This document shows, piece after piece, positions 3,032 through 52,697 of a DNA stretch of 52,933 nucleotides. How positions within the stretch are numbered: the stretch's first letter is position 1; each line of letters opens with the position of its first letter. The stretch is taken from assembly GCA_038087875.1 (NCBI GenBank), contig JAXLNO010002386.1, positions 310,001 through 362,933 of the forward strand, written 5' to 3'. Position numbers and translations under genes: made by a program. The notes below the pieces were generated by a model. That model was given only the letters and a program-made list of their open reading frames with translations. It was not told where the DNA came from and made no database searches. The DNA comes from Malacoraja senta. Taxonomy: Eukaryota.

Positions 3032-3049
3032 ATAATAGTGCTATCCAAA

Positions 3050-5157: not shown

Positions 5158-5367
5158 TAAATTGTAAAAGACAATGTAAAAAGAATACACATGTGATCCA
5201 TGAACTAGTTCAAAGAGTTGCCTTGCCTCAGGCACCATCCACTGAATGCTGCCGAGTGGTGTATTGTGGAATACTTTGTAAGATTGCATGGAATAAAAAT
5301 ATACATCAATCATAATTAATTTAAATGGCACAGAGGATGCCAGGTTTTATTTACACTCTGTTGTGTT

Positions 5368-6411: not shown

Positions 6412-6494
6412 TGTTTACACTTTATTTGGAGACACAGAACAATGCTGCACAAGGCACGATGTACAGGAAGGAACTGCTGATGCTGGTTAAAACT

Positions 6495-7184: not shown

Positions 7185-7529
7185 CTTGGTGCAGCCAACA
7201 CCAAGGCTCAGTGGAGGTCTACAGTCTAGGGTCCTTCGTGGCAATACATTGGGGGGCTGCAACTGGTGAAGACGGCCCTCAAACAAGGGACGGGCTATTA
7301 ACCCAGGAGGGCTATACGAGTGGCAAGGGTGCTTGATATAAGGATAGTTTGTGAACACAACCAAAAATAACCGTAATTAATCCATGTGTGGACACTGAGA
7401 ATGGCAGAAACGTTGTTTGCCCTGTTCTTATTTTGTATACATTTCATTATTCTGAATAATATTTATCCTTGGTGGGGAAAAAATCCCTCCAGATATTACC
7501 TGACCTGCTGAGTCCCTGCAGCCCTTTGT

Positions 7530-8760: not shown

Positions 8761-8771
8761 TAGATTGTGTC

Positions 8772-9215
8772 AGAAGGAACTGCAGATGCTGGTTTAAACT
8801 GAAGAAAGACACAAAAAGCTGAAGTAACTCAATGGGACACGCAGCATCATTGGAGAGAAGGAATGGGTGATATTTCGGGTTGAGACCTTTTTGGGTCGAA
8901 ACCCTTCTTCAGGAAGGACCTACAGATGCTGGTTTACACCGAAGACAGACATAAAATGCTGGAGTAACTCAGTGGGACAGGCTGTATCACTGGAGAGAAG
9001 GAATGGGTGACATTTCGGGTCGACATCCTTCTTCAGGAAGGATTAACAGATGTTGGTTTACACCGAAGACAGACATAAAATGCTGGAGTAACTCAGCAGG
9101 ACAGGCAGCATCTTTGGAGGGAAGGAATGAGTGACGTTTCTAAACATCATCCATTCCTTCTCTCCATAAATACTGCCTGCCCTGCTGAGTTACTCCAGCA
9201 TTTTGTGTCTATCTT
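8772..9215. repeat. Three tandem PLE pLTR units (starts 8772, 8911, 9035; about 124 bp) followed by an inverted unit
   Basis: Repeated AGGAAGGA..CAGATGCTGGTTTA...GAAGGAATG.GTGA..TTTC, then reverse-complement sequence at 9141-9215. Confidence 0.88.
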
Positions 9216-9671
9216 TGGGGTATAGATAGGATAGAGAGTAACTGTCTCTTTCCCGGGGCAGTGGAGACTAGAACTGGAGGTTTAAGGTGATGGGAGAGAA
9301 ATGTCAAGGGGATCTGAGCAGACGATTCTCACCGCAGGAGTTATCTGGAATGAGCTGCAGGGGAGATGGTAGAGGCAGATATAATCACAATGTCTATAAA
9401 GCATTTGGACTTTTGGTAGGAAAGTCAGGGAGGGATAAGGGCGTAATTCATGTAATTGTAGATAAACATCTCGGTCAGCATAGACAAGATTGTGCAAAAG
9501 GGCCTGTTTATATGCTGCATGATTCAGTTTATTTTAAGATTCTTTCTGTGGTTTTCATGTTGCTATCTCTATTAGCCAGAATAAGCACTGAAAATGGCTC
9601 AAGCAGTCTACACCAGAGAGAACACTGCGTGAACCAAAGGAAGTGAGATAGGTAAAATAGGTTATTTCGTT

Positions 9672-11705: not shown

Positions 11706-11889
11706 AATAATCTAAGTAAGCTTGATATTTAGAATCATATACAGCATAGAAACAGGCCCTTCAGCCCAGCTTATCTATGCCAGCCAAGATGCCTCATCTA
11801 CCCTTGACCCACCTATCTATATTTTAGGTACACAAAAATGCTGGAGAAACTCAGCGGGTGCAGCAGCATCTATGGAGCGAAGGAAATAC

Positions 11890-11922
11890 GCAACGTTTCG
11901 GGCCGAAACCCTTCTTCAGACT
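11890..11922 (-). ncRNA. Minimal type I hammerhead ribozyme in a solo PLE pLTR fragment (about 11828-11922)
   Basis: - strand agtCUGAAGAAGGGUUUCGGCCCGAAACGUUgc, with the same core as 5462-5496. Confidence 0.72.
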
Positions 11923-12178
11923 ATATTTAGCTTAGTTTAATTTATTATTAATGTCATGTGTACTGTTTTGCAGTGAAAATGTTTCTTGTGTGCTGTCCAG
12001 TCAGTGAAAAGACTACATTACAATGAAGCCGTTCACAATCTATAGATACAGGGTAAATGATATCATGTTTAGTGCAATGTAAATCCAATTGGTGTTTTGC
12101 CAATTTCCCTCCAAACCTTTCCTATCCATAGAAATGTCTATTACTTGAGAATAATTGTATTATTTTATTTGTGTCTAG

Positions 12179-12439
12179 GGCCTCACACACTGATCTATTA
12201 CTACACCCTGAACCACGGGAATACTCATCTACCAGAATATAGTGTCGTGGGTGTTCTGGACGGTTGTGAGATACAGTATTATGACAAAAACATGGTCATT
12301 ACAGTTCCAAGACAGAAATGGATGGCGGCTGCATTTGACAGGAATTACTGGGTAACAAATACAGTCTCTGAAACTGGTTTCCATGGAATCATCAAAGGGC
12401 AAGTCGATGAATGGATGCGGAGGCAGAACGAAACAGCAA
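12179..12439 (+). CDS. MHC class I-like alpha chain, alpha1-domain exon (261 bp, phase 1/1)
   Basis: Acceptor ttgtgtctAG at 12177-78 and donor GTTAGT at 12440. Translation GPHTLIYYYT...GVLDG...PRQKWM...NYW...RRQNET matches the class I alpha1 pattern (H3, Y7, G26, D29, P47-R48, W51, Y59-W60, R84, N86 sequon). Confidence 0.95.
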
Positions 12440-26404: not shown

Positions 26405-26680
26405 ATTATCACTACGTTCAAGGACAGTTTGGTTGTGAGGTGAACGATCACAGTCCCACTGTAGGGATATTGAAGTTGGCTTTTGATGGAAGATATGCAT
26501 TTAGTTTTGATAAGGACAAGCTAAAGTGGACGGTGCATGATCCAATAGCTGAGCCCTTCAAAGAGAAATGGGACAAGAATGAAAAAATGAACCGTTATTT
26601 CAAGAGCTTGTTAGAACATGACTGTGTGGATCTATGGCTTACATACTATGCAATTGGAAAGACATACCTGACCAGAAAAG
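26405..26680 (+). CDS. MHC class I-like alpha chain, alpha2-domain exon (276 bp, phase 1/1)
   Basis: Acceptor ttttatttcAG and donor GTGAGT at 26681. HYVQGQFGC(101)...AFDG...WT...KW...C(164)...Y171...GK..L.R is the class I alpha2 pattern, with the canonical 276-bp exon size. Confidence 0.96.
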
Positions 26681-33507: not shown

Positions 33508-33992
33508 ATATAGTCAAAAGTTTGTGTGTTATCCAATCAGATCATACTACACATGTGCAATCAAGCCATCCACAAGTAGAACAGCGCAAAGAGAAAACTA
33601 CTCAGAGTGCAGAATATCGGGTTACAATATCATAGCATTACAGTTACAGAGAAAGTGCAGATCAAAAAGAGTTGCAAGGTTCACAATGAGATTGGTTGGA
33701 AGATCAGGACAACATCTTATCTTACATGAGAATCATTCAGTAGTCCAATAACAGTGGGGAAGAAACTGCTCCTGAATTTAATGGTACGTACTTTCAAACT
33801 TTGTTGTGTACTGTCTTAACATGGAGCGTACGATCCCTTTTAAACCACGTGGTTGGTTGATGGGACGAAAGAGGCAAAATGGGGCAGATGTGGACAGTAA
33901 CTTGGTTGTTGTAGTAGACTGAAGTATATTTTGTGGTGGGTGACTGTGCACGTTTTACTGAAGATGAAAATAACCATCTTACTGTCTTGTAG

Positions 33993-34259
33993 TTTCCCCT
34001 GAGGTCACTCTCGCTGCCCGCCCTGATGACCATTCAGTCCTGTACTGCACTGTGTTTGGATTTTACCCACCGGCCATCAATGTCAGCTGGTTGCAGAATG
34101 GTCAACATGTCTCTGAGACCAAATCTTCTGGGGTCATACCCAACAACGATGGAACATATCATCTAAAGTCTGTCCTTGAGTATGATCCGTATGATGGGAA
34201 ACAGTATTCCTGTCATGTCGATCACAGCAGCCTGCCCGGTGGGAAGACCATCATCTGGG
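33993..34259 (+). CDS. MHC class I-like alpha chain, alpha3 Ig C1-set exon (267 bp, phase 1/1)
   Basis: Acceptor ctgtcttgtAG and donor GTAAGA at 34260. SPEVTL...LYCTVFGFYPPAINVSW...PNNDGTY...YSCHVDHSSL is a C1-set motif with both cysteines. Confidence 0.95.
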
Positions 34260-34544
34260 GTAAGAACATTAAATATTCTTTCATAGATAATCATTATCTT
34301 CTGTTGTTTCCATTTTAATCATTGTGACTACATCCCATATTCCAAGATGCTTAAACTTTCTTTGTTTAGTGGTGTTGCTCTAATCAATCACGTAATCAGC
34401 ACCCACTCTCCACATGAGCAGAAGACTTTGTCAACAGAAAATTTATCAAAAGTAAATAAATAACTAATATACAAGGAAGGAGTATTTGAGATTCTCAGTT
34501 GTGGAACTGAAATCCATGAAAGGTATGTTTAAATAAAAAATGAA

Positions 34545-36834: not shown

Positions 36835-39800
36835 TCAGTATCCCGTACCTGCCTTCTCTCCATACCCCCTGATCCCTTTAGCCACAAGGGCCACATCTAA
36901 TTCCCTCTTAAATATAGCCAATGAACTGGCCTCAACTACCCTCTGTGGCAGAGAGTTCCAGAGATTCACCACTCTCTGTGTGAAAAAGTTTTTCCTCATC
37001 TCGGTCTTAAAGGATTTTCCCCTTATCCTTAAGCTGTGACCCCTTGTCCTGGACTTCCCCAACATCGGGAACAATCTTCCTGCATCTAGCCTGTCCAACC
37101 CCATAAGAATCTTGTACGTTTCTATAAGATCCCCTCTCAATCTCCTAAATTCTAGCGAGTATAAGCCAAGTCTATCCAGTCTTTCTTCATATGAAAGTCC
37201 TGACATCCCAGGAATCAGTCTGGTGAACCTTCTCTGCACTCCCTCTATGGCTATAATGTCCTTCCTCAGATTTGGAGACCAAAACTGTACGCAATACTCC
37301 AGGTGTGGTCTCACCAAGACCCTGTACAACTGCAGTAGAACCTCACTGCTCCTATACTCAAATCCTCTTGCTATGAAGGCCAACATACCATTCGCTTTCT
37401 TCACTGCCTGCTGCACCTGCATGCCTACTTTCAATGACTGGTGTACCATGACACCCAGGTCTCGCTGCATCTCCCCATTTCCTAATCGGCCACCATTTAG
37501 ATAATAGTCTGCCTTCCCGTTTTTGCTACCAAAGTGGATAACCTCACATTTATCCACATTATACTGCATCTGCCAAACATTTGCCCACTCACCCAGCCTA
37601 TCCAAGTCACCTTGCAGTCTCCTAGCATCCTCCTCACAGCTAACACTGCCCCCCAGCTTAGTGTCATCCGCAAACTTGGAGATGTTGCTTTCAATTCCCT
37701 CGTCCAGATCATTAATATAAATTGTAAATAGCTGGGGTCCCAGCACTGAGCCTTGTGGTACCCCACTAGTCACTGCCTGCCATTGTGAAAAGGACCCGTT
37801 TACTCCTACTCTTTGCTTCCTGTTTGCCAGCCAGTTCTCTATCCACATCAATACTGAACCCCCAATACCGTGTGATTTAAGTTTGTATCCTAATCTCTTA
37901 TGTGGTACCTTGTCGAAAGCCTTCTGAAAGTCCAGATACAACACATCCACTGGTTCTCCCCTATCCACTCTACTAGTTACATCCTCGAAAAATTCTATAA
38001 GATTCGTCAGACACGATTTACCTTTCGTAAATCCATGCTGACTTTGTCCAATGATTTCACCACTTTCCAAATGTGCTGCTATCCCATCTTTAATAACTGA
38101 CTCTAGCAGTTTCCCCACTACCGATGTTAGACTAACTGGTCTGTAATTCCCCGTTTTCTCTCTCCCTCCCTTCTTAAAAAGTGGGGTTACGTTTGCTACC
38201 CTCCAATCCTCAGGAACTACTCCAGAATCTAAAGAGTTTTGAAAAATTATCACTAATGCATCCACTATTTCTGGAGCTACTTCCTTAAGTACTCTGGGAT
38301 GCAGCCTATCTGGCCCTGGTGATTTATCGGCCTTTAATCCATTCAATTTACCCAACACCACTTCCCGACTAACCTGGATTTCACTCAGTTCCTCCATCTC
38401 CTTTGACCCGCGGCCCCCTGCTATTTCCGGCAGATTATTTATGTCTTCCTTAGTGAAGACGGAACCAAAGTAGTTATTCAATTGGTCTGCCATATCCTTG
38501 TTCCCCATGATCAATTCACCTGTTTCTGACTGCAAGGGACCTACATTTGATTTAACTAATCTCTTTCTCTTCACATATCTATAAAAACTTTTGCAGTCAG
38601 TTTTTATGTTCCCTGCCAGTTTCCTTTCATAATCTATTTTCCCTTTCCTAATTAAGCCCTTTGTCCTCCTCTGCTGGTCTCTGAATTTCTCCCAGTCCTC
38701 TGGTATGCTGCTTTTTCTGGCTAATTTGTACGCATCATCTTTTGCTTTGATACTATCCCTGATTTCCCTTGTTATCCACGGATGCACTACCTTCCTTGAT
38801 TTATTCTTTTGCCAAACTGGGATGAACAATTTTTGTAGTTCATCCATGCAGTCTTTAAATGCCTTCCATTGCATATCCACCGTCAACCCTTTTAGAACTA
38901 ATTGCCAGTCAATCTTGGCCAATTCACGTCTCATACCCTCAAAGTTACCTTTCTTTAAGTTCAGAACCGTTGTTTCTGAATTAACAATGTCACTCTCCAT
39001 CCTAATGAAGAACTCAACCATATTATGATCACTCTTGCCCAAGGGGGCACGCACAACAAGTCTGCTAACTAATCCTTCCTCATTACTCAATACCCAGTCT
39101 AGAATAGCCTGCTCTCTCGTTGGTTCCTCTACATGTTGGTTTAGATAACTATCCCTCATACATTCCAAGAAATCCTCTTCCTCAGCACCCCTGCCAATTT
39201 GATTCACCCAATCTATATGTAGATTGAAGTCACCCATTATAACTGTTTTGCCTTTGTTGCACGCATTTCTAATTTCCTGTTTGATGCCATCCCCAACTTC
39301 ACTACTACTGCTAGGTGGCCTGTACACAACGCCCACCAGCGTTTTCTGCCCCTTAGTGTTTCGCAGCTCTACCCATACCGATTCCACATCCTCCAAGCTA
39401 ATGTCCTTCCTTTCCACTGCGTTAATCTCCTCTCTAACCAGCAACGCCACCCCACCTCCTTTTTCTTTCTCTCTATCCCTCCTGAATATTGAATATCCCT
39501 GGATGTTCAGCTCCCAGCCTTGGTCACCTTGGAGCCATGTCTCCGTGATCCCAACTATATCATAATCATTAATTGCTATCTGCACGTTCAACTCATCCAC
39601 CTTATTACGAATGCTCCTTGCATTGAGACACAAAGCCTTCAGACTTGTTTTTACAACGCTCTTACCCCTTATACAATTATGTTGAAAAGTGGCTCTTTTT
39701 GATTTTTGTCCTGGATTTGTCTGCCTGCCACTTTTACCTTTCACCTTGCTACCTATTGCTTCCGCCCGCATTTTACACCCCTCTGTTTCTCTGCTCACCC

Positions 39801-40134
39801 ATTTAAGAACCCCACCACCTCTTATTCTCTGTTTATTATTGTTTTCTTCTTTCCCCCCTACATGTTGGGTCTGAGTGCTTTCCTTCTCTGCCTCCTGCCT
39901 CACACACTGTCTAATAGCATTCTCTATTTGAGTCCCTCCCCCCAACCATTCTAGTTTAAAGTCTCCCCAGTAGCCTTTGCAGATCTCCCCGCAAGGATAT
40001 CGGTCCCCCTCAGGTTCAAGTGCAACCCATCCTTTTTGTACAGGTCGAACCTTCCACAAAAGAAGTCCCAATGATCCAGAAATTTGAATCCCTGCCTTCT
40101 GCACCAGTCCTTCAGCCACGCATTTATCCTCCAC
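36835..40134 (-). CDS. CR1 ORF2: APE endonuclease plus reverse transcriptase (first in-frame ATG at 39771)
   Basis: Open frame of 1099 codons: LNARSIRNK, ITETWL, GGGVALLV, GDFN, SDHN; NYRPVSL, QHGF, DFQKAFDKVPH, GVPQGSVLGP, FADD. Confidence 0.95.
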   Translation of the reverse strand: MEDKCVAEGLVQKAGIQISGSLGLLLWKVRPVQKGWVALEPEGDRYPCGEICKGYWGDFKLEWLGGGTQIENAIRQCVRQEAEKESTQTQHVGGKEENNNKQRIRGGGVLKWVSRETEGCKMRAEAIGSKVKGKSGRQTNPGQKSKRATFQHNCIRGKSVVKTSLKALCLNARSIRNKVDELNVQIAINDYDIVGITETWLQGDQGWELNIQGYSIFRRDREKEKGGGVALLVREEINAVERKDISLEDVESVWVELRNTKGQKTLVGVVYRPPSSSSEVGDGIKQEIRNACNKGKTVIMGDFNLHIDWVNQIGRGAEEEDFLECMRDSYLNQHVEEPTREQAILDWVLSNEEGLVSRLVVRAPLGKSDHNMVEFFIRMESDIVNSETTVLNLKKGNFEGMRRELAKIDWQLVLKGLTVDMQWKAFKDCMDELQKLFIPVWQKNKSRKVVHPWITREIRDSIKAKDDAYKLARKSSIPEDWEKFRDQQRRTKGLIRKGKIDYERKLAGNIKTDCKSFYRYVKRKRLVKSNVGPLQSETGELIMGNKDMADQLNNYFGSVFTKEDINNLPEIAGGRGSKEMEELSEIQVSREVVLGKLNGLKADKSPGPDRLHPRVLKEVAPEIVDALVIIFQNSLDSGVVPEDWRVANVTPLFKKGGREKTGNYRPVSLTSVVGKLLESVIKDGIAAHLESGEIIGQSQHGFTKGKSCLTNLIEFFEDVTSRVDRGEPVDVLYLDFQKAFDKVPHKRLGYKLKSHGIGGSVLMWIENWLANRKQRVGVNGSFSQWQAVTSGVPQGSVLGPQLFTIYINDLDEGIESNISKFADDTKLGGSVSCEEDARRLQGDLDRLGEWANVWQMQYNVDKCEVIHFGSKNGKADYYLNGGRLGNGEMQRDLGVMVHQSLKVGMQVQQAVKKANGMLAFIARGFEYRSSEVLLQLYRVLVRPHLEYCVQFWSPNLRKDIIAIEGVQRRFTRLIPGMSGLSYEERLDRLGLYSLEFRRLRGDLIETYKILMGLDRLDAGRLFPMLGKSRTRGHSLRIRGKSFKTEMRKNFFTQRVVNLWNSLPQRVVEASSLAIFKRELDVALVAKGIRGYGEKAGTGY

Positions 40135-40550
40135 CTCGCTCCATTCCTACTCTCACTGTCGCGTGGTACAGGCAGTAATCCCGAGATTGTTACCTTTGCT
40201 GTCCTTCTCTTTAACTCCCCTCCTAACTCCCTAAATTCTCCTTTCAGGACCTCTTCTCTTTTTTTACCTATGTCATTGGTACCTATATGTATCACGACCT
40301 CGGGCTCCTCTCCCTGCCCTTTCAGGATGTCTTGGACACGTTGGGACACATCACAGACCCTGGCACCAGGGAGGCAAACTACCATCCGGGTCTCCCGACT
40401 GCGTCCACAGAATCGCCTGTCTGACCCCCTAACTATAGAGTCCCCTATTAATATTGCCCTCCTCTTCTTTTCCTTACCCTTCTGAGCAACAGGACCGGTC
40501 TCTATACCGGAGGCCCGGCCGCTGTCGCTACCCCCAGGTAGGCTGTCCAC
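39951..40550 (-). CDS. CR1 ORF1 C-terminal SGNH/GDSL esterase domain (N-terminus missing)
   Basis: GDSIVRG, PGA, HIGTND and DGLHLN blocks. Confidence 0.88.
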   Translation of the reverse strand: MDSLPGGSDSGRASGIETGPVAQKGKEKKRRAILIGDSIVRGSDRRFCGRSRETRMVVCLPGARVCDVSQRVQDILKGQGEEPEVVIHIGTNDIGKKREEVLKGEFRELGGELKRRTAKVTISGLLPVPRDSESRNGARWRINAWLKDWCRRQGFKFLDHWDFFCGRFDLYKKDGLHLNLRGTDILAGRSAKATGETLN

Positions 40551-40763
40551 CCCAACATATCATCTTATATACCTTGAAAAGCCCCAAAGATAGACACAAA
40601 ATGCTGGAGTAACTCAGCGGTCAGGTAACATCTCTGGAGAAAAGGAATAGGTGGCATTTCGGGTCGAGACCCTTCTTCACTCTGAAGTCTTCAGACAGTG
40701 CCCATCTATTTAGCTGCACAGCTTAACAATTGATTTGTAAAATTATGAATTCTTATTTTTCAG

Positions 40764-40871
40764 AAGGAAATAGGAAGAAAGACAGGCACATAGGCCTTAT
40801 TGCCGTGTGTGTGCTGATATTGATGGCTATTGTCTTGGCAGTAATTGTTTGGTGGAGAAAAAAGAGGAGAG
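40764..40871 (+). CDS. MHC class I-like alpha chain, connecting peptide/transmembrane exon (108 bp, phase 1/1)
   Basis: Acceptor tcttatttttcAG and donor GTAAGA at 40872. Encodes (E)GNRKKDRHIGLIAVCVLILMAIVLAVIVWWRKKRR: a hydrophobic span followed by a basic stop-transfer sequence, in the correct phase. Confidence 0.88.
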
Positions 40872-41119
40872 GTAAGATGGAAAAATTGTGATGCACTGTT
40901 GCTAGTAATGGTATTGGGCTTGAAGAAATGATCGATCTCAAGTAGGATAAGGCAGCAGCTACACCTGAAATGCCTCGACAGTCACCACTGTCAACTAGCC
41001 TTTGTGCTGTTGTTAAATGTTTCTGATAATCAGATATTTAAAAATTGTGAATTCAGTGTAAAAACATGTTATACATTATGGATTCACTGCCCCAAATCCT
41101 AGAAATATCAATGAGTCAT

Positions 41120-43390
41120 TAAAAGGTACAGCATGGGGGCAGTCCTTTCGGCCCACTGTGTCCATGCCAACCACCAACCACCTGTTCTCATGAATTCTAT
41201 CTCATTGCACCTTCTCATCCAGTCACCCACCCACTAGGGGCAATTTACAGTGGCCAATTAAACTATAAACTGACACATCTTAGCATGTGTGAGGAAACCG
41301 GAGCCCCTGGAGGGATCCAATTCGGTTACACGGAGAACGTGCAAACTCCACATAGATGGCACTCAAGGTCAAAATTGAACCCGGGTCTGTGTCGCTGTGA
41401 GGCAGCAGCTCTACGAGTTGTGACACTGTGCTGCTCTGTTGGGGGCTCGCACTGTTCATGATCCAAGTCAGCTATGAGGCAGATTGGTTGCAGTTTAACA
41501 TTTACTAGTTTTGTTTAGTTTAATTTAGAGATACAGTGACGAAACAGGTCCTTAGGCCCACCGAGTCTGCGCTGACCAGCGATCCCCGCACATTAACACT
41601 ATCCTATACACGCACACCAAGCCAATTAACCTACATACCTGTACGTCTTTGGAGTGTGGGAGGAAACCTTAGATCTTGGAGAAAACACACGCGGTCACGG
41701 GGAGAACGTACAAACTCTGTACAGACAGCATCAGTAGTCGGGATCGAACCTGGGTCTCCGGTGCTGCAAGCACTGTAAGGCAGCACCTCTACCACTGCAC
41801 ACAGTAGCTGCCACCAAGGCCGCTGTTGCTGGAAAACTCCAAATTAAGTGGGAATGTGAGTAGTGGGAGAAATGGTTCAAGGTGGAAAGCCGAATGAATG
41901 AGCAACAACATGACAGGTGGACTACAATGTGAAACAGGACAGCACAGAGCCAGAGACCTGAATTAAATACCGACATTGGCTGTTGTATCTGTAGAGTTTG
42001 CATGTTGTTCCTGTGACCATGTGGGTTTTCCCAGGTGCTCTGGTTTCCTCCCACATCCCCAAAACATTGTTTGGTAGGTTAGTTGTCCCCTAGATTGTGC
42101 ATGATACAATGTGGGGAGAGCTGATGAGAATGTGGGATAAATATAGGATTAGTGTACATGAATGGTTGGTGCAGGTCAGTGGGACAAAGGCCATGTTTGT
42201 ATGCTGCATATTTCCATGACTCTTTATGATGTAGAAAAATGCTGACTATTTTTGATTTATAAGATTGGGAAAGACTGTGAGGGAGAGTGCTATAGCAACT
42301 CAGCAGGTCAGGCAACATCCCTGGAGACCATGGATAGGTGACAATCTGGTTCGAGACTCTTCAGGCAAATTACAATGGGTATTCCACCGCTTAAGTCTTT
42401 TTTTAATTTTTATTTTTTTAATTTTATTTATTAGAAGTACATTACATTACAACTACATACATTAGTACTCGTCACTTATATCTTCTTACAATTAATGTAC
42501 TCCGTTTGTTTTTTACACTAGTAAAAGGAAAGGATAAGATTGAAAGAAAGAAGAAAGTGAAGGAAAAAGTGAAAGTGTAGAAAATGTGACAACAAGACAA
42601 AACAAAGACCCTATAAGAACAAAATTAAAAACAATAGAAAAAGAGTTAAGAAATAGACCCTAGAAAAGAAGGAGAAAGAGAAAGAGGAGAAAGAGAAAAA
42701 CAAATAGTTTTTATGAGCATTACGCAAATGGGACATACCAACTTTCCAGCTATCATCACCCTTTACCTGACCTCAGTTTTTTTTTTTATACGCTTAAGTC
42801 TGATAGTAGTGTACAGATGCACCTCAACCACTGACTTGCTCAACAAGTGCTTAAATTAGTTGAATTAAAGTATGTTTGGAGTAACATGCAGCAGTCCTTA
42901 AAATCTACCATTTCCCAAATCCCAAGAGAGCTGGATGATCAGGGTTTTAGTGTATTATTATCTATATCACTGGTTTCTTGCCTGTGATCACACTGTTGTA
43001 AGCGATATTCTGGTGATGAATTGCAGTTCACTTTCCTCCTGTGTAAAGGAGTTATTGTGTTGAATATAACAAGTGGATGGAAAGTCAGTGTAGGATTTAG
43101 AGTTTGTACGTAATGCAGCATGGTAGTGCAGCTGGTAGAACTGCTGCCTCACAACGCCAGAGACCCAGGTTCAATCTGGACCTCGGGTACTGTCTACGTG
43201 GAGTTTGCACATTCTCTTGTGACTATGTGGGCTTCCTCAGGGAGCTCCGGTTTCCTCCCATATCCCAAAGATGAGCAGGTGTGCAGGTAATCATCCTTGG
43301 TAAGACACCCTGATAGTGTAGGGGTGGATGGGAAATCTATTATGAATGGGTGATTGCTGGTTAGTATGGATTTGGTGGCACAAATGGCCT
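41120..43390. mobile_element. HE1-type SINE cluster (about 41120-41415 -, 41510-41800 -, 41900-42230 +, 43120-43390 +)
   Basis: SINE head, core and tail motifs. Further copies at about 12510, 13310, 15180, 19410, 29985, 32155, 51040 and 51305. Confidence 0.75.
42398..42790 (-). mobile_element. L1/Tx1 3'UTR fragment, same family as 4255-5157
   Basis: Reverse complement of about 4780-5155. 10-bp TSD CGCTTAAGTC at 42388-97 and 42791-800. Confidence 0.9.
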
Positions 43391-44652
43391 GTTTACACAC
43401 TGTATCACTGTTTTCAAGAGAGAGTTAGATTTAGCTCTTAGGGCTAAGGGAGTCAAGGGATATGGGGAAAAAGCCAGATCGGAGTATTAATTTTGGATGA
43501 TCAGCCATGTATGGCTCAAAGGGCCGAATAGCCTATTCCTGCACCTATTTTTTAATGTTTCTATCTTTCTATTAAATAAACTAAATTGGAAGACAGAAGG
43601 TATTGACTGATGCATCTTCACGCCAGCTGTAAATGTCATAAACTGTGAGAATTGATTGCAAATGTTATACAATATTATAAACTAAACTGGGTGATCAAAA
43701 TGACAAGATGGATGAAGAGCAGAGTTTTCATTGAAATAACAGACGTGCAGCTTTCTCGAGCACTTGGCCTTGGTTGTGTAATATTTCCTCTTCAAAATAC
43801 AATGTTCCCAGGCATTGCTGGTCTAAGACACCATTCAGCAAGTATATTTCCTGAAATTGAGATTCTGCTTTCATGGTATCAAGATGTCTAACAGCTCCAG
43901 CACCCAGATCAGAACCTTGCCAAAACTAAGAATGCAGCAACAATTTAGTCATTGAACATCAACGACATGCATATTTGAACTGAGGCAATGGTTAGCTTAT
44001 TATCACTGTAAACCAGTCATGGTCATGGGTCTGCCATTGTGGTCACTATTAGTGAGGGTGATTAACTATCATTTAGCAGTGAAACGGAAAAGAATTGGCT
44101 TTTCAAGCCCACGGTGCCATAGTCATACGGCATGGAAATGGGCCCTTTGCCTCAACTTGGCCATGCCAACCAAGATGCCATGTTTAAACTACAATTTTCC
44201 TGCAATTGACCCATATCTCACTGAACCTTTCCTATCTACAGTATGTACCTGTCCAAGTGTGTTCTAAATGTGTTTTAATACCTGCCTCAACTCCTTCCCC
44301 TGGAATGTTCTTCCATATTTCCACTTCCTCTGGTTCCGAGTAACTCGTTTCCTTCTCACCTTAAACCTAAGTCCTCTGGTTCTTGATTACACAAGGCTGG
44401 TTAAAAGATTCTGTGCATTCAATCTATCTATGCTCCTTGATTTTATAAACTTCTATAAGATCACCCCTCAGCCTCTTGCGTGCCAAGGACTAAAGTCCAA
44501 GCATTCTCATCCTCTCCCTGAATCACAGGCCCTGTTAATGACATCCTTCCGATAGTGGAGTGACCAAAACTTAACACAATACTCCAAATGTGGCCTCACC
44601 AACATCTTGTACAACTGTAGCAGAACATCCCAACTTTTGTATTCAGTACCTT

Positions 44653-47600
44653 TCTTTTAAATTTTTTTTATTGCTTTATTCCAAAAAACAAAAACAAAAA
44701 TAAAACATAAAAAACAGAGCAAAAAGAATAATGATAAACATAACAATGATATTGATACATAGGGATCAGGATTAAACACATTAATAACAGGTATAACCTA
44801 ATATGAGACCAGTGTCAAAATACACAATGAATATAGACCTCTCGGTCTTTATGTAAATGTAGTTAAATCTTTAAAAGGAAACATAAATGTTTAAAAAAAG
44901 CAAAGATAAAAAGACAAAAAGAAAAAGAAAAAACAAAACCCCCCTAAACTAAAAAATAAATTAAAAAATTGATAATAATAAAATAAGAATAAAAATAAAG
45001 TAAATAAATAAATAAAACAAAACAGAGCAAAACCGAATCTGAACTGAGAAATTCAACAATTTAAGTCTGTTTGTCGTCAAGTCCGTTCCACTCTATGAAG
45101 GTAAAATAATTTTTATAAAGGTTAAAGAGGGAACAATTTATGTTGTATAAATTTTCTATAAATTTATACAAATTTTCTATAAATTTTCCCCAAGTCTTAT
45201 CAAATTTAACCAAGGGTTCAACAATGTCACTTCTGATTTTTTCTAAATTTAAACATGATATCGTTTCAGAATATCACTGGAGTGTGGTCGGAGGGTTGGA
45301 ATCTTTCCATTTAAAGAAAATAAATCTTCTGGCAATTAATGTGGTAAAAGCAATCAACCGATGGGCGGAGTGGGACAAATGAATAGAATCTAACATTGGT
45401 AACCCAAAAATTGCAGTAATAGGATGAGGTTGTAAATCTATACCTAAGACTACCGAAATAGAATCAAAAATGTATTTCCAATATTTTTCCAAAAGAGGGC
45501 AGGACCAAAACATATGGGTCAGTGATGCCACTTCAGAGTTACATCTGTCACAGGTAGGATTTATATAACCATAAAAACGAGCTAACTTATCTTTTGACAT
45601 ATGAGCTCTGTGGACCACCTTGAATTGTATCAAAGCGTGTCTTGCACACATTGAAGAGGTATTAACTAATTGAAGGATCCTCTCCCATTTCTCTATAGAT
45701 AAAGAAATTTGGAGTTCTCTTTCCCAGTCATTCTTAATTTTATCAAATGTATCTATTTGCAATTTTAAAATCAACTCATGATTAGTCGTTATTAATCCTT
45801 TCTGATAAGGGTTCAACTAAAAAAAATTCCAAAATTTCGGGTTGATGTGGTAGCGGAAAAAGGGGTAGTTCCTTTTGTCTAATTTGGAAATATCTAAAAA
45901 AGTGTGAATTAGGTAAGTTATATTTATTGGAGAGTTGTTCGAAAGACATAAAACAACCCTCCAAAAACAAATTACGAAAAGCTACTAATCCCTTCCTCTT
46001 CCATAACAAAAAAACTTGATCAGTACTAGATGGTTGGAAGAGAAATTTGGATAAAATCAGATAGTCCAAAAAACGTATGAAATTGAAACTGTATTCGGAA
46101 CGTATGTCTTATTATTGGGTTCATCATATATTTATTCAATCTCGTAATTGTAAAAGGTAACGAGGCCCCTAGAATAGAAGCCAATTATAGACCTTGTAAG
46201 GAATCACATTCTAGGTTTATCCATCCAGGGCATTGGGTATCTTCTAAATCTTTTGTCCAAAATGTTAAATAACTAACATTGACTGCCCAATAGTAGAGTC
46301 TAAGGTTCGGCAATGCCAAACCACCAACTTTTTTTGATTTCTGTAGGTATTTTTTACCTAGTCTGGGATTTTTATTCTGCCATATATATGAAGAAATTTT
46401 AGAGTCTATAATATCAAAGAAAGATTTGGCAATAAAAATTGGTATCGTCTGAAATAAATACAGAAATGTAGGTAAAATGAACATTTTAATAGCATTGATT
46501 CGGCCAATTAAGGATAAGGACATTGGTGACCATTTAGTGAACTGATGTTTAATATGGTCAATTAAAGGAATAAAATTAGCTTTAAATAAATCCTTGTGTT
46601 TCTTGGCGATCTTAATACCTAAATAAGTAAAACTTTCGGTAGTCAATCTAAATGAAAGCTGTCCATAACTCGAAACAAATTTATTTAATGGGAAAGCTCA
46701 CTCTTACTAAGGTTTAGTTTATAACCAGAAAAACTACTGAATTGATTAAGTAATGCTACTATTGCCGGAATAGATTTCTCAGGGTTAGAAATAAATAATA
46801 ACAGATCATCTGCATAAAGAGATAGCTTATGTGTCTTATTCCCCCGGACAATACCAAAAATATTAGGGGATTCCCTAATAGCAGTGGCTAAAGTTTCCAA
46901 AGCAATATCAAATAGTAAAGGACTTAAGGGACAGCCCTGTCTAGTACCTTGAAAGAGCCTGAAAAAAGGGGATCTCTGATTATTAGTAAATACAGAAGCC
47001 TGAGGTATAAGATATATCAGTTTGATCCAAGAGATAAATTTTGGACCAATCTTAACTTTTTCAAGTATATTGAATAAGTATTCCATTCTACTCTATCAAT
47101 AACCTTCTCGGCATCAAGTGAGATGACACATTCTGGGGTTTTATTAGACGCTGTATGTACAATATTTATTAATCTCCTAACATTAAAGAATGAGTAACGA
47201 TTTTTAATAAAACCTGTCTGATCTTCAGAGATAATTTACGGTAAAATCTTTTCCAATCTCATAGCTAATATTTTGGAAATAATTTTAAAATCTACATTTA
47301 ACATTGATATAGGTCTATATGATGTCACTTCAGTAGGGTCTTTATCTTTTTTTTAAATTAAAGAAATAGAAGCTTCATAAAAAGATTGTGGTAATCTATT
47401 CCTTAAAAAAGGCTTCCTTAAATACCTTGCATAGCCATGGAGACAATAAATTTGAGAAATACTTTAAAAATTCTACTGTAAACCCATCTAAACCGGGAGT
47501 TTTACCAGAATTCATTGAAAAAATTGCTTTCTGTATTTCTTCTTCCGTGATGGGTTCATCTAACAACAGGGACTCATTGTATGGTAAATTTGGTAAGTTC

Positions 47601-50510
47601 AGTTTCTTTAAAAACTCATGCATTATATTGGAATCAGTAGGAAAATCTGATTGGTATAGGGAGGTATAAAATTCCTGAAAGGATTTATTAATTTCATCAT
47701 GGTCTACAGTTACTGTACCATCCCGTTTACTCACTTTAGTAATCTGACTCTTGGCCGACACTGCTTTCAATTGATTAGCAAGTAATTTACCAGATTTTTG
47801 CCATTTATATAAAATTTACTTTTGGTTTTAAGTAACTGGTTCTCAATCGGTGATACTAATAACAAATCATATCTCAATTGAAGTTCAACTCTATTCTTAT
47901 AGAGCTCTAAACTAGGAGCTTTTGAATATTTTTTATCAATTTCTTTAATCTCGTCAGCCAATGTGTGTATTTCTTTTTGTGTTTGTTTTTTTAATCCCGC
48001 GGAGTATGAAATAATTTGTCCATGAATATATGCCTTAAAAGCATCCCAAACTATATCATTGGATATCTCTTCATTAGAGTTTGTCAAGAAGTAAAAAGCA
48101 ATCTGATCTTTCATAAACTTAATAAAGTTTAAGTCTTGAAGCAAAGTAGTATTAAATCGCCATTGTTTAGCACTAAACTTGGAATCAGGTAGTTTGATCA
48201 ATAGTTTCACTGGTGCATGATCAGAAATAGCAATTGTATCATACTCACATGCAATGACCGATGGAACTAGCCGAGAATCTAGTATAAAATAGTCGATCCT
48301 AGAATAACTATGATATACATGAGAGAAAAATGAAAATTCTTTGTCATTTGCGTGTAAGAATCTCCAAATTTCTAACATTCCCGAGTCAAGTAAAAAATAA
48401 TTAATAAAATTAGCTGATTTATTTGGAAGCACATGATCAGATGTAGATCTATCAATCGAGGGATTCAAACAGCAATTGAAGTCTCCACCCATTATTAAAA
48501 AGTGTTCATTTAAATTAGGAAAGGATGCAATTAACTGTTTAAAAAACTCAGGGTGATCAATATTTGGTGCATAGACATTCACCATAGCGACTTTTTGCCT
48601 ATAAAGGACACCGGTAATCACCAAGAATCTGCCATATGGATCAGAAATTGTTTCATGCTGAACAAACGGAATTGAGGGGTCGATAAAAATAGAGACTCCT
48701 TTCCCCTTAGCCTGTGAATTTGAATGAAACTGCTGTCCTCTCCAAAACTTGAAAAATCGTGACTTGTCATCTTGCCTTACATGAGTTTCCTGAACAAAGA
48801 TAATCTGAGCATTTAGTCTGTGAAGAACTTTTTTTTTTTAATCCTCTTAATGGGATGGTTCAAGCCATTCACATTCCATGAAAGGAACTTTATCCATATT
48901 GCTTGTAAAAATCATGTGGGATGTAATGGGTTAATTTCTTGAAGCCTAAAAGTTCATAATACTGGAAGAAGTAAAATCTAGGGCGGAGCCAGGTGACGAC
49001 ATTTCAGCCAATTTTGTAGTTCAGAATTTGCACAAATGGAGATCACTAAATAGGGAACAAAAGACCCCTCCCCCTCCCACCCCTGTAGAACCCCAAACTG
49101 ACCAAAAGACAGTCAGCAAACTACCTAATCCCCTCCATGATCCCATCTCTCCCAGTAACAGCGCTCAGCATAAAATGAATAATATTTAACCACTACGTCA
49201 TAGCACATTCGTTATTATCTCTTTGAGAGAGAAGAAAAAAAAATACAGACTGGCATGGAATGCTGCTTATTATTATCCAAGGTCAAGATATGAAAAACAA
49301 GAACTGCGTTCTCTTAGTTTGTCTAACGACAGGGGAACACGAATTAACAAAGAAATTCTTAAAAGAATATATATAAAAGAAAAACAACTCGTCCAGTTAA
49401 ATTCTTAATCATTACCAAACGAAATGTTGTCAAAATAGGAACAGTAAATCTCCAATTATAACTTAATCAGCTATCAATTACTCCCCTTCCTCGTCGTAGC
49501 TCTTCAGACGCAGCTGGAGGCGTCTTGAGGACTGTTAAAAAATCGAAAGTTACCATTGAAAAGCCGAATACGCAATCTAGCTGGTGACAATAAAGCTGGG
49601 CGCAGTTTTTCTGATATAAATCAGACATTACATTATAAAAAGTCTTTCTTATTTCCAAAAGCTCGTAACTATAATCAGGGACAAACCGAAACTTACATCC
49701 TTCATATTCAACCACACCAAACATTTTTGCTGCCTGGAGAATATTCTCCTTCATTTGAAAAAAATGAAACCGAATGATCAAGTGTCTCGGTTTATTACCG
49801 GATCTCTTCCCAATCCTGTGTGCGTTATCCATGAACGGAAGGTTTTCATTGTGCTCAATGTTGAATGTTTCCTTTATCATTTTAGAAGCATATTTTATAA
49901 CGTTATTTCCTTCTTGGCCTTCCGGCAAACCAACAATTCGTCAATTCAAACGATGGCTTCTGTTTTCTAAGTCCATATTTTTAGACTTGTATTGCTGAAG
50001 TGCTCGAGTGTTTTCATTCATTCGCCGTTCCAATTTTTCAATCTTCAAATCTCTCGCCTGTCCCAGGGTGCGCAAGATATCAATTTGATCATTTTGTTCA
50101 CGAAGTTCATCTTGTAACAAAGACAGTATTCCTTGGACTTCCTTCAATTTGGTCGAAACTCCTTTCACCATTTCTTCCAAACTGCCAAATCTTGTTTTCA
50201 TTTCATTTTTCAGCTCATTTTTCAATTCTTCGTTCATTTTCGATATTGCTTCTATGATGCTGGAATCAGAAGCTGCAGCTGTGGTTGTGGCTTTCCCCAG
50301 TTCCTTCTTTGGGGATCCTCCTTTCCTTCTTGTCTCCATCCTTTTCACGATTAAGGCGTGTAAAAGTGTTATCAACACTTTATGAACAGTTAGACGGTGT
50401 CTTAAAGTCAAATAGTCACCAGTAACATTGAAAGAGTGGTCAGTGGAAGTTAAAAATTAAGGGAGCAAACGAGTTTGCAACCTTACAGCATGCCGCCACT
50501 AGGAGAGTCT
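44653..50510 (-). mobile_element. Near full-length but frameshifted L1-clade LINE (about 5.9 kb)
   Basis: ORF1 coiled coil plus RRM pieces (49467-50411). ORF2 pieces: endonuclease GGDFN, RIDYF, SDH (47767-48900); RT GTRQGCPLSPLLF, YADD (46685-47086); C-terminal CDRC..HMFWSC (45274-45816). AATAAA and A-tail near 44660. Confidence 0.93.
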
Positions 50511-51680
50511 AGCTACTGACATGTTATTGATGTTCATGATTATTCTGTTCTTTGTGCCTGGCCATTTTGACTTTGTCACATTTTACTTGGTTTATGATAT
50601 TGTACAAGATTTGCAATCACACCTCCAAATTGACTAAAATTATCCCAATTAACTAAATGCCTACTATGGCATTTAAATTATTGCATTATATTCAGTGCAG
50701 GGTAGAAGCTGCAGTTTTTTTTAAAAGGGCAAGTTGTTATTACATACTATGTGGTGTGTGCCTGGAAAGCACTGCCAGGGATGGTGGCGTCTGGGGTGCA
50801 CCTTCGTGGGTGCATGGAGATGCAGGGGTTTGAGGGACATGAATCATTTGCAGGCAGATGCTGCCTAACTGGTGTCTGTCCGACTGATCTGGAGGGATCT
50901 GATGGTCAGGCAGGGAATATTTCCAGTGACCCAATGGTGCTGAGTTCGCTGAATTTTACGGTGAATGGGAATGCCCCTGTAATAGAGGAACAGGTCCTTT
51001 GTCCAACAATGTTTGTGCTGAACATGACGCAACCCGAGGCAGAGTGGCGCTGCTGATAGAGCTGCTGCCTCTGTGCGTCATAGACATCAGTTCAATCCTA
51101 ACCTCGCTTGTCGGCTGTGTGAAGTTTGCATGTATTCCCTATGACCGCATGGGTTTCCACTGTCCTCCAGTTTTCACACACATACTAAAGATGCCAGTTT
51201 TATGGGTTAATTGGTCTCTGTAATTTGACCCTAGTGTGGAAGCGAAAGTTAGATAACATAGAACTTGTGTGAACGAAACTATTTGAAGGAGTATTGAGTT
51301 TTATGTTTAGTTTAGAGAGAGAGCATTGGAACAGACACTTCGGCCCCACTGAGTCCGCACCAACCAACGATCACCCACATAAGCTAGGGACACAAGTCAA
51401 TTAACCTACAAACCTGCACATCTGTCTTTAGAATGTGGGAGGAAACTGGAGCATCTGGAGAAAACCTATGCAGTCACAGGGAGAAGGTACAAATTCCGTA
51501 CAGACATCACCCGTGGTCAGGATCAAACCCAGGTGTCTGGCGCTGTGCCTTTATATCTGGAAGGAAGATGTTATGTGGGATGAATCAACAGTTAAAGCGA
51601 ATAAACTAGTTGCATCTTTCTGAGTTCTGTTCTCTGCTATGCCATTTCTTTGTTGTCTAATATTTAATTTCCCTCCTCAG

Positions 51681-51721
51681 ATTATCAAAATATTCAACCA
51701 AAGCAGAACGTGCACTGCTAA
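51681..51721 (+). CDS. Probable terminal cytoplasmic exon of the class I-like gene, (D)YQNIQPKQNVHC-stop
   Basis: Strong acceptor tttaatttccctcctcAG, phase 1 continues from the TM exon, TAA at 51719-21, followed by ATTAAA (51755) and AATAAA (51774). Linkage across the 10.8-kb intron is inferred. Confidence 0.7.
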
Positions 51722-51773
51722 CCAATCGCTGAGTAGAATGATTTCATGGATGTGATTAAAATGCAGGAACTGA

Positions 51774-51779
51774 AATAAA
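51774..51779 (+). terminator. Candidate polyadenylation signal AATAAA of the class I-like gene
   Basis: AATAAA about 50 nt after the stop codon, with ATTAAA at 51755-60. Confidence 0.5.
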
Positions 51780-52697
51780 TGGAAAGAGTTAAATTAAGTT
51801 TATCAAACATGACAGAAATTCTGCCCTGCATTTGTCCAAATTAGAGCTATCTAGCAATTTATGTTGATAACAACTGATACGACTGAGGCCTCAACTCCTT
51901 TACTGTGCTTATTCCACATAAGACACAATTCCCTGGTCTTTTAGAATATATCCACGCATTATCCATCAATTCACCACCACATCATGCCTCTTTAATACAT
52001 TCATAAGGTTAACTCTGTTTCTTGTCATCTCCAAGGGACACAGAACCAGTGATTTCAGCCATTCATGGTTAGGCAACACTTGCTTATTCCAGAAATCTCT
52101 TCTAGCTGATATCAAATATTAATATATCCTTTCTTAAATTTGAGGACCAAGCTGTGCACAGTGCTCCTGATTTGTCCTTAGCAACATCATGTACCATAAT
52201 TACAATAGTAACCTACTTTGAACGCCAATATGCTACTCACCTTCTGCGTTGTGTGCTGCATCTACCTGCTGGCTTTTTGTTTTGCACTTTAAGCACTTGA
52301 ATCTTTTGTACTCCACTCATTTGCTATCTCACTCCATTTAGATAATACCTTCTTTTAATTGCTCTTACCAGAGTGTGTGAGCACATATTTTCCATCATTA
52401 AACTCCATTTGCCATGTTTATGTTCATCTAACAAAGAGTCATGGAGCCATATAGCATGGAAGTAGGTACTTCAGCCTAACGCTCCAAGCTGAACAAGATG
52501 GTACATCTAGGTTAGTCACATTTGCCAGCGTTTGGCCCACTTTCCTCTCAACATGTTCTATCCATGTACCTGTCCAAGTGTCTTTTCAATGTTGTTATTC
52601 TGCCTTCGCTGGCAGCTCATTCCATACACCCAGTAACCTCTTAGTAGGAAAGGTTGCCTCTCAGGTTCCTACTAAATCTTCCTCCTCACCTTAAACC

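What the first reader, a model, noticed from the sequence alone, without database searches (positions are those of the whole stretch)
40764..51721. Cartilaginous-fish class I-like protein with a human CD1b-like tail (RKKRRDYQNIQP)
Seen: splicing the TM exon to the 51681 exon gives WW-RKKRR-D-YQNI-QPKQNVHC*, a YxxPhi motif 6 residues from the membrane. Established: the human CD1b tail is RRRSYQNIP, and its YQNI recruits AP-2/AP-3 for lysosomal lipid loading. Classical class I tails usually carry YxxA instead. Inference: this gene may encode an endosome-routed, CD1-like presenter (ancestral or convergent), although its ectodomain still looks like class I.
Basis: partly seen in the sequence, partly recalled or inferred. 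Interest (0 to 1): 0.82.

Follow-up and report, generated by a model that had tools for sequence, protein, structure and literature searches.

The report
Skate UGA gene's tyrosine sorting tail
The short exon is real: it is the spliced last coding exon of a skate copy of UGA, a shark and ray class I-like gene already on record as CD1-like, and its Tyr-x-x-Ile/Val signal is kept across sharks and rays, so the molecule probably passes through endosomes or lysosomes as CD1b does.

Summary
TM exon 40764-40871 joins a terminal exon at 51681 in phase and reads ...VIVWW-RKKRR-D-YQNI-QPKQNVHC*. A 3.5-kb mRNA contig from a related skate lies on the window exon by exon, with breaks at the predicted splice sites, including 40871|51681. 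A contig from the RNA-type run X1 starts to fit at 51679, with no depth over the intron just upstream.

The gene belongs to the elasmobranch non-classical class I lineage UGA. PDB 9CH4, "shark nonclassical MHC class I, UGA", matches all three ectodomain exons at E about 1e-35, and the ML clade has 100/99 support.

The tail rule [KR]4-5-[DEAG]-Y-x-x-[I/V] holds in about 20 shark, ray and skate species. None of 38 other class I-like tails in my sample has a YxxPhi.

Trafficking itself is untested.

UGA and its CD1-likeness were already on record (a 2025 review and the PDB title). This scan has also reported the same YQNI tail on other UGA copies of this genome (s1-140134, s1-140082). This is therefore a further, apparently intact copy of a known kind. 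Its leader exon is not in the window.

The parts
12179..12439 (+). alpha1 exon (phase 1 at both ends)
   Evidence: The open frame reads GPHTLIYYYT.... It matches 9ch4_A at E 1.1e-37. mRNA L001 fits 12177-12439 at 92% identity.
26405..26680 (+). alpha2 exon
   Evidence: Pfam PF00129, E 2.1e-13. It matches 9ch4_A at E 4.2e-35. L001 fits 26407-26680 at 94.5%.
33993..34259 (+). alpha3 (C1-set Ig) exon
   Evidence: PF07654, E 3.2e-20. It matches 9ch4_A at E 3.3e-35. L001 fits 33991-34259 at 95%.
40764..40871 (+). Connecting-peptide, transmembrane and basic stop-transfer exon (EGNRKKDRHIGLIAVCVLILMAIVLAVIVWWRKKRR)
   Evidence: Read directly and translated. L001 fits 40763-40871 at 94.5%.
40872..51680 (+). 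10.8-kb intron between the TM and tail exons, swollen by minus-strand LINE pieces (endonuclease ORF 47770-48837, further ORFs 45277-47092 and 49470-50456) and a very high-copy short repeat at about 51390-51550
   Evidence: ORF lists. Pfam Exo_endo_phos on 47770-48837. Contig depths up to about 46,000 over 51393-51533 in all four runs.
51681..51721 (+). Coding part of the terminal exon: (D)YQNIQPKQNVHC plus the TAA stop
51683..51694 (+). YQNI, a tyrosine-based YxxPhi sorting motif
   Evidence: Codons TAT CAA AAT ATT. Tyr and Ile/Val are kept across the lineage.
51722..52697 (+). 3' untranslated region of the same terminal exon (at least this long)
   Evidence: L001 goes on to fit 51679-51953 and 51952-52697. 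The X1 contig runs past 51899. The AATAAA at 51774 is therefore not the only, or not the main, poly(A) signal.

Best explanation
The window holds exons 2 to 6 of a skate member of UGA, an MHC-linked non-classical class I lineage of sharks and rays.

Shown:
- The gene has five phase-1 exons spread over 40 kb by retrotransposon insertions.
- The TM exon is spliced straight to a terminal exon 10.8 kb away.
- The result is a 13-residue cytoplasmic tail, RKKRR-DYQNIQPKQNVHC.
- A Tyr-x-x-Ile/Val sits 5-7 residues after the membrane in essentially every full-length orthologue. It lies at the very C-terminus in sharks and is followed by 8 more residues ending in Cys in batoids.

Inferred:
- This is a working tyrosine-based sorting signal.
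- At the cell surface it would be bound by the mu2 subunit of AP-2 and pulled into clathrin pits.
- Its closeness to the membrane, the short tail and the Ile/Val at Y+3 are the layout of LAMP-1 (GYQTI) and CD1b (SYQNI). Part of the pool would therefore go on, possibly through AP-3, to late endosomes or lysosomes.
- There the ligand loaded in the ER would be exchanged before the molecule recycles to the surface.

Taken together with the reported lipid-filled UGA groove, the gene would work like CD1b or mouse CD1d. By sequence it is not a CD1 family member.
For: Splicing:
- The cross-species mRNA L001 lies collinearly on all five exons, with breaks at the predicted sites.
- The X1 contig starts at 51679 and intron depth there is zero.
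- The same run holds words of the alpha3 exon (0.62) and of the tail exon (0.38).
- Three Logan 334-aa products, on contigs of 1.4-3.5 kb, end ...RKNRRDYQNIQPNQNVPC.

Lineage:
- 9ch4_A matches at E 1e-37, 4e-35 and 3e-35, against 1e-9 to 1e-12 for any other solved class I.
- The 9CH4 title names UGA.
- The ML tree gives a UGA clade at 100/99 and skates at 100/100. The window is 94% identical to the Amblyraja copy.

Motif conservation:
- Skates: DYQNI or DYQTI.
- Pristis: AYENI.
- Hemitrygon and Hypanus: DYESI.
- Mobula: DYENI.
- Heptranchias, S. canicula and Carcharodon: DYNIV.
- Heterodontus: AYNAV.
- Stegostoma: GYNVI.
- Chiloscyllium and Hemiscyllium: DYSVV or DYSFV.
- S. torazame: DYNTV.
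- Cetorhinus: DYNVV.
- Mustelus: EYNAV.

Control: 0 of 38 other class I-like tails have a YxxPhi.

CD1 parallel:
- Tails of CD1b, CD1c and CD1d are basic residues followed by Y-Q/E-x-I. Examples are human CD1b RRRSYQNIP and pig CD1d RRRVYQNIQ (PMC5002277).
- CD1b, CD1c and CD1d use AP-2. CD1b and mouse CD1d also use AP-3 to reach late endosomes and lysosomes (PMC10545705).
- UFA and UGA are reported as CD1-like lipid binders (PMC12562908; PMC10751288).
Against: - No adaptor binding, localisation or ligand data exist for this protein in what I could reach.
- The mRNA that shows the junction comes from another skate (92-95% identical exons).
- The X1 contig differs from the window at 12 letters and 10 gapped positions over 221 nt. 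It may come from a paralogue or a sister species. The letters of its 77-nt upstream part were not printed.
- The leader exon is not in the window. I cannot show that this copy is complete, and other UGA copies in this genome are broken (s1-140082).
- Some RefSeq isoform models end differently: Leucoraja X5, Chiloscyllium X1 and X2, Rhincodon X1 and X2 (GYSLT), Heptranchias X2.
- Several extra paralogues lack the motif: Pristis b and c, and Hemitrygon 2.
- A YxxPhi alone does not say which compartment is reached.
Confidence: 0.8

Rival explanations
1. The tyrosine is just the old class I tail tyrosine (the Y320 equivalent) kept in a shortened tail. It serves general class I turnover or dendritic-cell endolysosomal routing. 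It is not a CD1-type adaptation tied to lipid loading.
For: MAFFT places the UGA Tyr in the same column as the conserved tail Tyr of classical-type batoid, turtle and teleost class I (GYNPT, GYVAP, GYAAA, DYSKA). The ectodomain is class I by profile.
Against: The classical tails have A, P, T or K at Y+3, never a bulky hydrophobic (0 of 38). Their Tyr lies 10-14 residues from the membrane, inside a tail of about 30 Ser-rich residues. UGA differs on both counts, and those are the features that define a strong YxxPhi lysosome-type signal. A short alignment column is weak evidence of homology.
Confidence: 0.15
2. The motif is a phosphotyrosine signalling site (ITIM-like or Grb2-type pYxN), or a basolateral sorting signal in epithelia, and not an endosomal loading signal.
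For: The window's YQNI and the YENI of Pristis and Mobula fit pY-x-N. YxxPhi signals also direct basolateral sorting through AP-1B (established knowledge, not tested here).
Against: Asn at Y+2 is not conserved: skate YQTI, stingray YESI, shark YNAV, YNVI and YSVV. An ITIM needs a hydrophobic residue at Y-2, and here it is Arg or Lys. The residues that are conserved are Y and Y+3, which is the adaptor-binding pair.
Confidence: 0.04
3. This particular copy is a silent or incomplete paralogue of an expanded skate family. Its intact-looking tail would then reflect recent duplication and not present function.
For: The leader exon was not found in the 12 kb upstream. Rhinoraja has 10 near-identical RefSeq products on one chromosome record. 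Earlier notes report a frameshifted UGA copy and a disabled class I-like gene nearby in this genome. The X1 contig is not identical to the window.
Against: All five visible exons are open. They have canonical GT-AG borders and the right phases, and are 94% identical to the Amblyraja product with no frameshift. Introns of 6-14 kb make a leader exon beyond the window's start unsurprising. No differences from the window were listed within 51681-51721 in the X1 contig.
Confidence: 0.2

Closest known systems
Elasmobranch non-classical MHC class I lineage UGA (PDB 9CH4, 'Crystal structure of shark nonclassical MHC CLASS I, UGA', released 2026-03-18)
   Same: Identity to 9CH4 is roughly 65% over alpha1, and all three ectodomain exons match at E about 1e-35. 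The window sits in one well-supported clade with shark and ray orthologues. It has the same exon plan and the same short basic tail with YxxI/V.
   Different: The skate and other batoid tails carry 8 extra residues after the motif, ending in an invariant Cys. The review describes UGA as single- or low-copy, whereas the family looks expanded in skates (10 RefSeq products in Rhinoraja, several copies in this genome).
Mammalian CD1b, CD1c and CD1d (for example human CD1b tail RRRSYQNIP, pig CD1d RRRVYQNIQ)
   Same: A short cytoplasmic tail: a basic stop-transfer stretch, one spacer residue, then Y-Q/E-x-I/V close to the membrane. The window's YQNI is letter for letter the CD1b motif. UGA is reported to hold CD1d-like lipids.
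   Different: The ectodomain is not a CD1 by profile (PF16497 below its cut-off, PF00129 above). Six of eight classical peptide-end-binding residues are retained. Orthology to CD1 is unresolved, and adaptor use is untested.
LAMP-1 type lysosomal targeting signals (GYQTI at the C-terminus, 6-9 residues from the membrane; recalled from Bonifacino and Traub 2003 and Rohrer et al. 1996, not checked here)
   Same: Rhinoraja copies read DYQTI. Shark tails end directly after the motif. Stegostoma has GY. The spacing from the membrane is 5-7 residues.
   Different: Most UGA tails have Asp or Glu, not Gly, before the Tyr. The batoid motif is not C-terminal.
Classical-type batoid class I (for example Hemitrygon P0189, Mobula P0190)
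   Same: The alpha1-alpha2-alpha3-TM plan, and a tail Tyr in the aligned column.
   Different: Only 33-38% identical. The tail is about 33 residues and Ser-rich, reading GYNPT with no hydrophobic residue at Y+3. T143 and Y159 are present.

Membership tests
Elasmobranch UGA lineage | Close sequence match to the solved UGA heavy chain over alpha1, alpha2 and alpha3 | tested here: met
   9ch4_A matches at E 1.1e-37, 4.2e-35 and 3.3e-35. The next solved class I chains score about 1e-9 to 1e-12 on alpha1 and alpha2. The entry title names UGA.
Elasmobranch UGA lineage | Falls inside the clade of shark and ray orthologues, apart from classical class I | tested here: met
   IQ-TREE: a 19-row clade at 100/99 on a 0.54 stem, batoids 99/99, skates 100/100. 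The window is nearest to Amblyraja. 9CH4 itself was not in the tree.
Elasmobranch UGA lineage | Linkage to the MHC class Ib cluster | not testable with these tools
   No marker gene lies in the window, only repeats and this gene. Linkage is stated in PMC10751288 and PMC12562908 for the UFA and UGA lineages.
Elasmobranch UGA lineage | Hydrophobic groove holding lipid | not tested
   This rests only on the literature statement. My AF2 model was too weak (mean pLDDT 65) to measure a pocket. By alignment, T143 is Phe and Y159 is Leu.
CD1 | Matches the CD1-type profile (Pfam PF16497 MHC_I_3) better than the class I profile | tested here: not met
   On alpha2, PF00129 scores 50.7 bits (cut-off 28.3) and PF16497 scores 17.2 bits (cut-off 35). 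On alpha1 no family passed at E 0.01. No CD1 chain is among the top 60 solved matches to alpha2 or the 27 matches to alpha1.
CD1 | Short tail with a YXXZ motif, as in CD1b, CD1c and CD1d | tested here: met
   RKKRRDYQNI against RRRSYQNIP.
CD1 | Orthology or shared synteny with tetrapod CD1 | not testable with these tools
   PMC10751288 itself calls orthology hard to assess.
Tyrosine-based YxxPhi sorting signal | Y-x-x-bulky hydrophobic in the cytosolic tail of a type I membrane protein | tested here: met
   YQNI follows a 23-residue hydrophobic span and RKKRRD.
Tyrosine-based YxxPhi sorting signal | Y and Phi kept under selection while neighbours vary | tested here: met
   Tail table of about 50 products from about 20 species. 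Control: 0 of 38.
Tyrosine-based YxxPhi sorting signal | Binds AP mu subunits and drives internalisation or lysosomal delivery | not testable with these tools
   This needs bench assays.
Classical MHC class I (peptide presenter) | Full set of invariant peptide-terminus-binding residues (Y7, Y59, R/Y84, T143, K146, W147, Y159, Y171) | tested here: not met
   By alignment with classical-type sequences, Y7, Y59, R84, K146, W147 and Y171 are kept. T143 is Phe and Y159 is Leu, and the Leu is seen in every UGA row aligned.

The most novel reading that the evidence does not exclude
The lipid-type groove and the membrane-proximal YxxI/V tail of UGA may be inherited, together with those of CD1, from one ancestral endosome-sampling lipid presenter. 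That ancestor would already have existed in the first jawed vertebrates, so CD1 and UGA would be true homologues and not look-alikes. A smaller new point is that skates have expanded this supposedly low-copy gene into a family of about ten.
Probability: 0.2. Interest if true: 0.85.

Novelty: new member of a known kind. Interest (0 to 1): 0.5.

Why it matters
If the tail works as it reads, the lysosome-sampling route that lets CD1b and mouse CD1d pick up processed lipids is not a tetrapod invention. The same design of short basic tail plus YxxI/V has been kept for the whole history of sharks and rays, on a molecule reported to hold lipids. This gives a simple handle on an open question, the age and origin of lipid antigen presentation. 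The handle is a Y-to-A tail reporter and adaptor binding with shark and skate tails. For genome annotation, the finding shows that the last coding exon of these genes can lie more than 10 kb from the TM exon and is easily missed or replaced by read-on models, as in Leucoraja isoform X5.

Tried and rejected
- Leader exon: tblastn with the Rhinoraja and Amblyraja signal peptides and regex searches of all + frames found nothing. L001 letters 1-151 have no match either. I conclude that it lies outside the window.
- Alternative tail of Leucoraja isoform X5 (AGEFDV...): no match in the window. I treat it as a model artefact or a locus-specific exon.
- AATAAA at 51774 as the poly(A) signal: rejected as the sole site, because the mRNA continues to at least 52697.
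- Primary UGA/UFA paper: five library searches and a search for the code 9CH4 found only the 2023 and 2025 mentions. The Almeida 2020 and 2021 papers and Briken 2002 are not held. The supplement of PMC10751288 has no UFA entries or matching accessions.
- AF2 model of the Amblyraja orthologue: mean pLDDT 65, pTM 0.47. I used it only to pull the 9CH4 title and date, and drew no groove conclusions from it.
- ITIM and Grb2 readings: rejected on non-conservation of Y-2 and Y+2.
- Read laying did not print the loose-end letters at 51679, so the partner of the X1 contig was not read directly.
Full report
**What is in the sequence**

On the + strand the window carries five open, phase-1 exons with canonical GT-AG borders:
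- alpha1, 12179-12439
- alpha2, 26405-26680
- alpha3, 33993-34259
- connecting peptide, TM and stop-transfer, 40764-40871
- a terminal exon starting at 51681

The TM exon ends in a lone G. With AT at 51681-51682 this makes Asp, followed by TAT CAA AAT ATT (YQNI, 51683-51694), then QPKQNVHC and TAA at 51719-51721. Joined, the exons give a 316-residue mature chain with no stop or frameshift. So is the count of six residues between the membrane and the Tyr.

**Is the junction used?**

Yes, on three lines of evidence.

1. A 3,455-nt Logan contig (L001, SRR11241640) encodes a 334-residue relative on one uninterrupted frame. It lies on the window in five collinear blocks whose ends are the predicted exon borders:
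   - 12177-12439
   - 26407-26680
   - 33991-34259
   - 40763-40871
   - 51679-51953, continuing to 52697

   Its own sequence reads ...CAGGAGAG|ATTATCAAAATATTCAACC... across the join. Exon identity of 92-95% shows that it comes from another skate, so this is cross-species evidence.

2. In the RNA-type run X1, which holds words of both the alpha3 exon (0.62) and the tail exon (0.38), a 585-nt contig fits 51679-51899 only from its 78th letter. Depth is zero over 51581-51674. The 2-nt overlap is expected because both the TM exon and the intron end in AG. The tool did not print the 77 upstream letters, so I did not read the partner directly.

3. tblastn with the skate tail has a single good hit in the window, at 51680-51718.

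The 3' UTR runs on for at least 1 kb, so the AATAAA at 51774 is not the main end. The 10.8-kb intron is explained by minus-strand LINE fragments and a very abundant short repeat.

**What gene is it?**

- Each ectodomain exon matches one solved chain far better than any other. 9ch4_A scores E 1.1e-37 on alpha1, 4.2e-35 on alpha2 and 3.3e-35 on alpha3. Other class I, MR1 and ZAG chains follow at about 1e-9 to 1e-12 on alpha1 and alpha2.
- Foldseek returned the entry's title: "Crystal structure of shark nonclassical MHC CLASS I, UGA", released 2026-03-18.
- A whole-library HMMER search and two word-index searches recovered orthologues named only "class I ... F10 alpha chain-like" or "MR1-like" in about 20 elasmobranch species.
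- The window is 93.7% identical to the Amblyraja radiata product, about 91% to Rhinoraja and Leucoraja, 56-72% to other rays and sharks, and 33-38% to classical-type batoid class I.
- In an ML tree the UGA rows form a clade with 100/99 support on a long stem. Shark and batoid sub-clades follow the species tree, and the window sits inside the skates. Classical-type sequences form a separate clade.
- Pfam scores alpha2 as class I (PF00129, 50.7 bits) and not as the CD1-type domain (PF16497, 17.2 bits, cut-off 35).
- By alignment, six of eight peptide-end-binding residues are kept. T143 is Phe and Y159 is Leu.

**The tail across the lineage**

Skates:
- the window: RKKRR-DYQNIQPKQNVHC
- Amblyraja: DYQNIPPNQNVPC
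- Leucoraja and three transcript-derived products: DYQNIQPNQNVPC
- nine Rhinoraja products: DYQTI[QP]PN[QR]N[MR]RC

Other batoids:
- Pristis: AYENIRANQNLRC
- Hemitrygon and Hypanus: DYESIRAHRRVNC
- Mobula: DYENI[PR]AHRNVNC

Sharks end directly after the motif:
- Heptranchias, S. canicula and Carcharodon: DYNIV
- Heterodontus: AYNAV
- Stegostoma: GYNVI
- Chiloscyllium and Hemiscyllium: DYSVV or DYSFV
- S. torazame: DYNTV
- Cetorhinus: DYNVV
- Mustelus: EYNAV

Only the Tyr, the Ile/Val at Y+3 and, in batoids, the last Cys never change.

Exceptions are one Rhincodon isoform (GYSLT), several alternative isoform models, extra paralogues in Pristis and Hemitrygon, and the Pristiophorus UniRef models.

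None of the 38 has a Yxx[LIVMF] anywhere in its tail. The classical-type ones read GYNPT, GYVAP, GYAAA and DYSKA in long Ser-rich tails.

**How it most likely works**

Shown: a short tail with a conserved, membrane-proximal YxxI/V on a class I-like chain.

Established for the comparators:
- CD1b, CD1c and CD1d tails are basic residues followed by Y-Q/E-x-I/V. Examples are human CD1b RRRSYQNIP, pig CD1d RRRVYQNIQ and horse CD1c SYQNIQ... (PMC5002277).
- CD1b, CD1c and CD1d are internalised through AP-2.
- CD1b and mouse CD1d also bind AP-3 and reach late endosomes and lysosomes, where lipids are exchanged (PMC10545705).

Reported for the lineage:
- UFA and UGA are CD1-like. Crystal and mass-spectrometry data suggest lipids like those of CD1d (PMC12562908, citing a personal communication).
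- UFA was called CD1-like earlier (PMC10751288).

Inferred:
- The skate protein is endocytosed through its YQNI.
- By the LAMP-1/CD1b rule, recalled and not tested here, a motif 6-9 residues from the membrane in a short tail favours lysosomes. On that rule the protein would sample late compartments.

I give the splicing and lineage claims about 0.95, and the sorting function about 0.7.

**Rivals**

- The Tyr may be the old classical tail tyrosine, since MAFFT puts them in one column. What defines the UGA tail, though, is the hydrophobic Y+3 and the shortened spacing, and classical tails lack both.
- A phosphotyrosine reading fails because Y-2 and Y+2 are not conserved.
- This copy may be silent or incomplete. 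The leader exon is not in the window, and other copies in this genome are broken. All visible exons here are intact.

**Comparison and novelty**

By sequence the gene is a UGA member. In its tail it works like a CD1, but by profile it is not one.

The lineage, its CD1-likeness and a crystal structure are already on record. I found no text that describes the tail motif, but the primary paper is not in the library.

This scan has already reached the same conclusion on two other UGA copies of this genome. One (s1-140134) has its tail exon 14 kb from the TM exon. The other (s1-140082) is frameshifted.

This window adds a further copy, intact as far as the window shows, and an independent replication with direct mRNA collinearity. 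I score it as a new member of a known kind, of moderate interest.

Noticed in passing
window 34260-34318: Reading through the alpha3 donor gives GKNIKYSFIDNHYLLLFPF*. This is almost the same as the C-terminus of the RefSeq model of 311 aa in Leucoraja (P0180); the 298-aa Rhinoraja model (P0167) ends in a shorter, related read-through tail. It is either a real secreted isoform made by intron retention or a shared annotation artefact.
   Followed up: partly
P0234 (Scyliorhinus), P0225 (Cetorhinus); in the window, alpha3 34259 joined to 51681: Shark RefSeq isoforms skip the TM exon and join alpha3 straight to the tail exon (…W|DYNTV*). All exons are phase 1, so the same skip in this gene would stay in frame and give a soluble chain ending in DYQNIQPKQNVHC.
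   Followed up: no
Rhinoraja longicauda products P0151, P0165-P0173 (one 41-Mb record): Ten near-identical UGA products on one chromosome record, together with several copies in this genome (earlier notes), point to an expansion in skates. The 2025 review describes the lineage as single- or low-copy.
   Followed up: partly
window 51716-51718 (last codon, Cys): Every batoid UGA tail ends in Cys (…VHC, …VPC, …RRC, …LRC, …VNC). Shark tails stop before it. Its function is unknown. A possible parallel is the conserved tail Cys of CD1c noted in PMC5002277.
   Followed up: no
P0016 (Leucoraja erinacea XP_055486430.1, on the same 127-kb contig as UGA copy P0180): This neighbouring class I-like gene is sister to the UGA clade (98/94) and 40% identical to the window. 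It has a longer tail without YxxPhi. Earlier notes call this a UGA-sister lineage.
   Followed up: partly
window 36835-40550, minus strand (alpha3-TM intron): A LINE that looks intact. One ORF of 1099 aa carries endonuclease and reverse-transcriptase domains. It is preceded by an ORF of 199 aa with a GDSL-type esterase domain, an ORF1 type known from CR1/L2-like elements.
   Followed up: partly
window about 51390-51550: A short repeat just upstream of the tail exon draws contig depths of 10,000-46,000 in all four runs laid, with many partial joints. It looks like a very abundant SINE-like element.
   Followed up: no
window 1-12178: No leader exon for this gene was found upstream of alpha1. The 5' 151 nt of the related mRNA have no match in the window.
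   Followed up: yes
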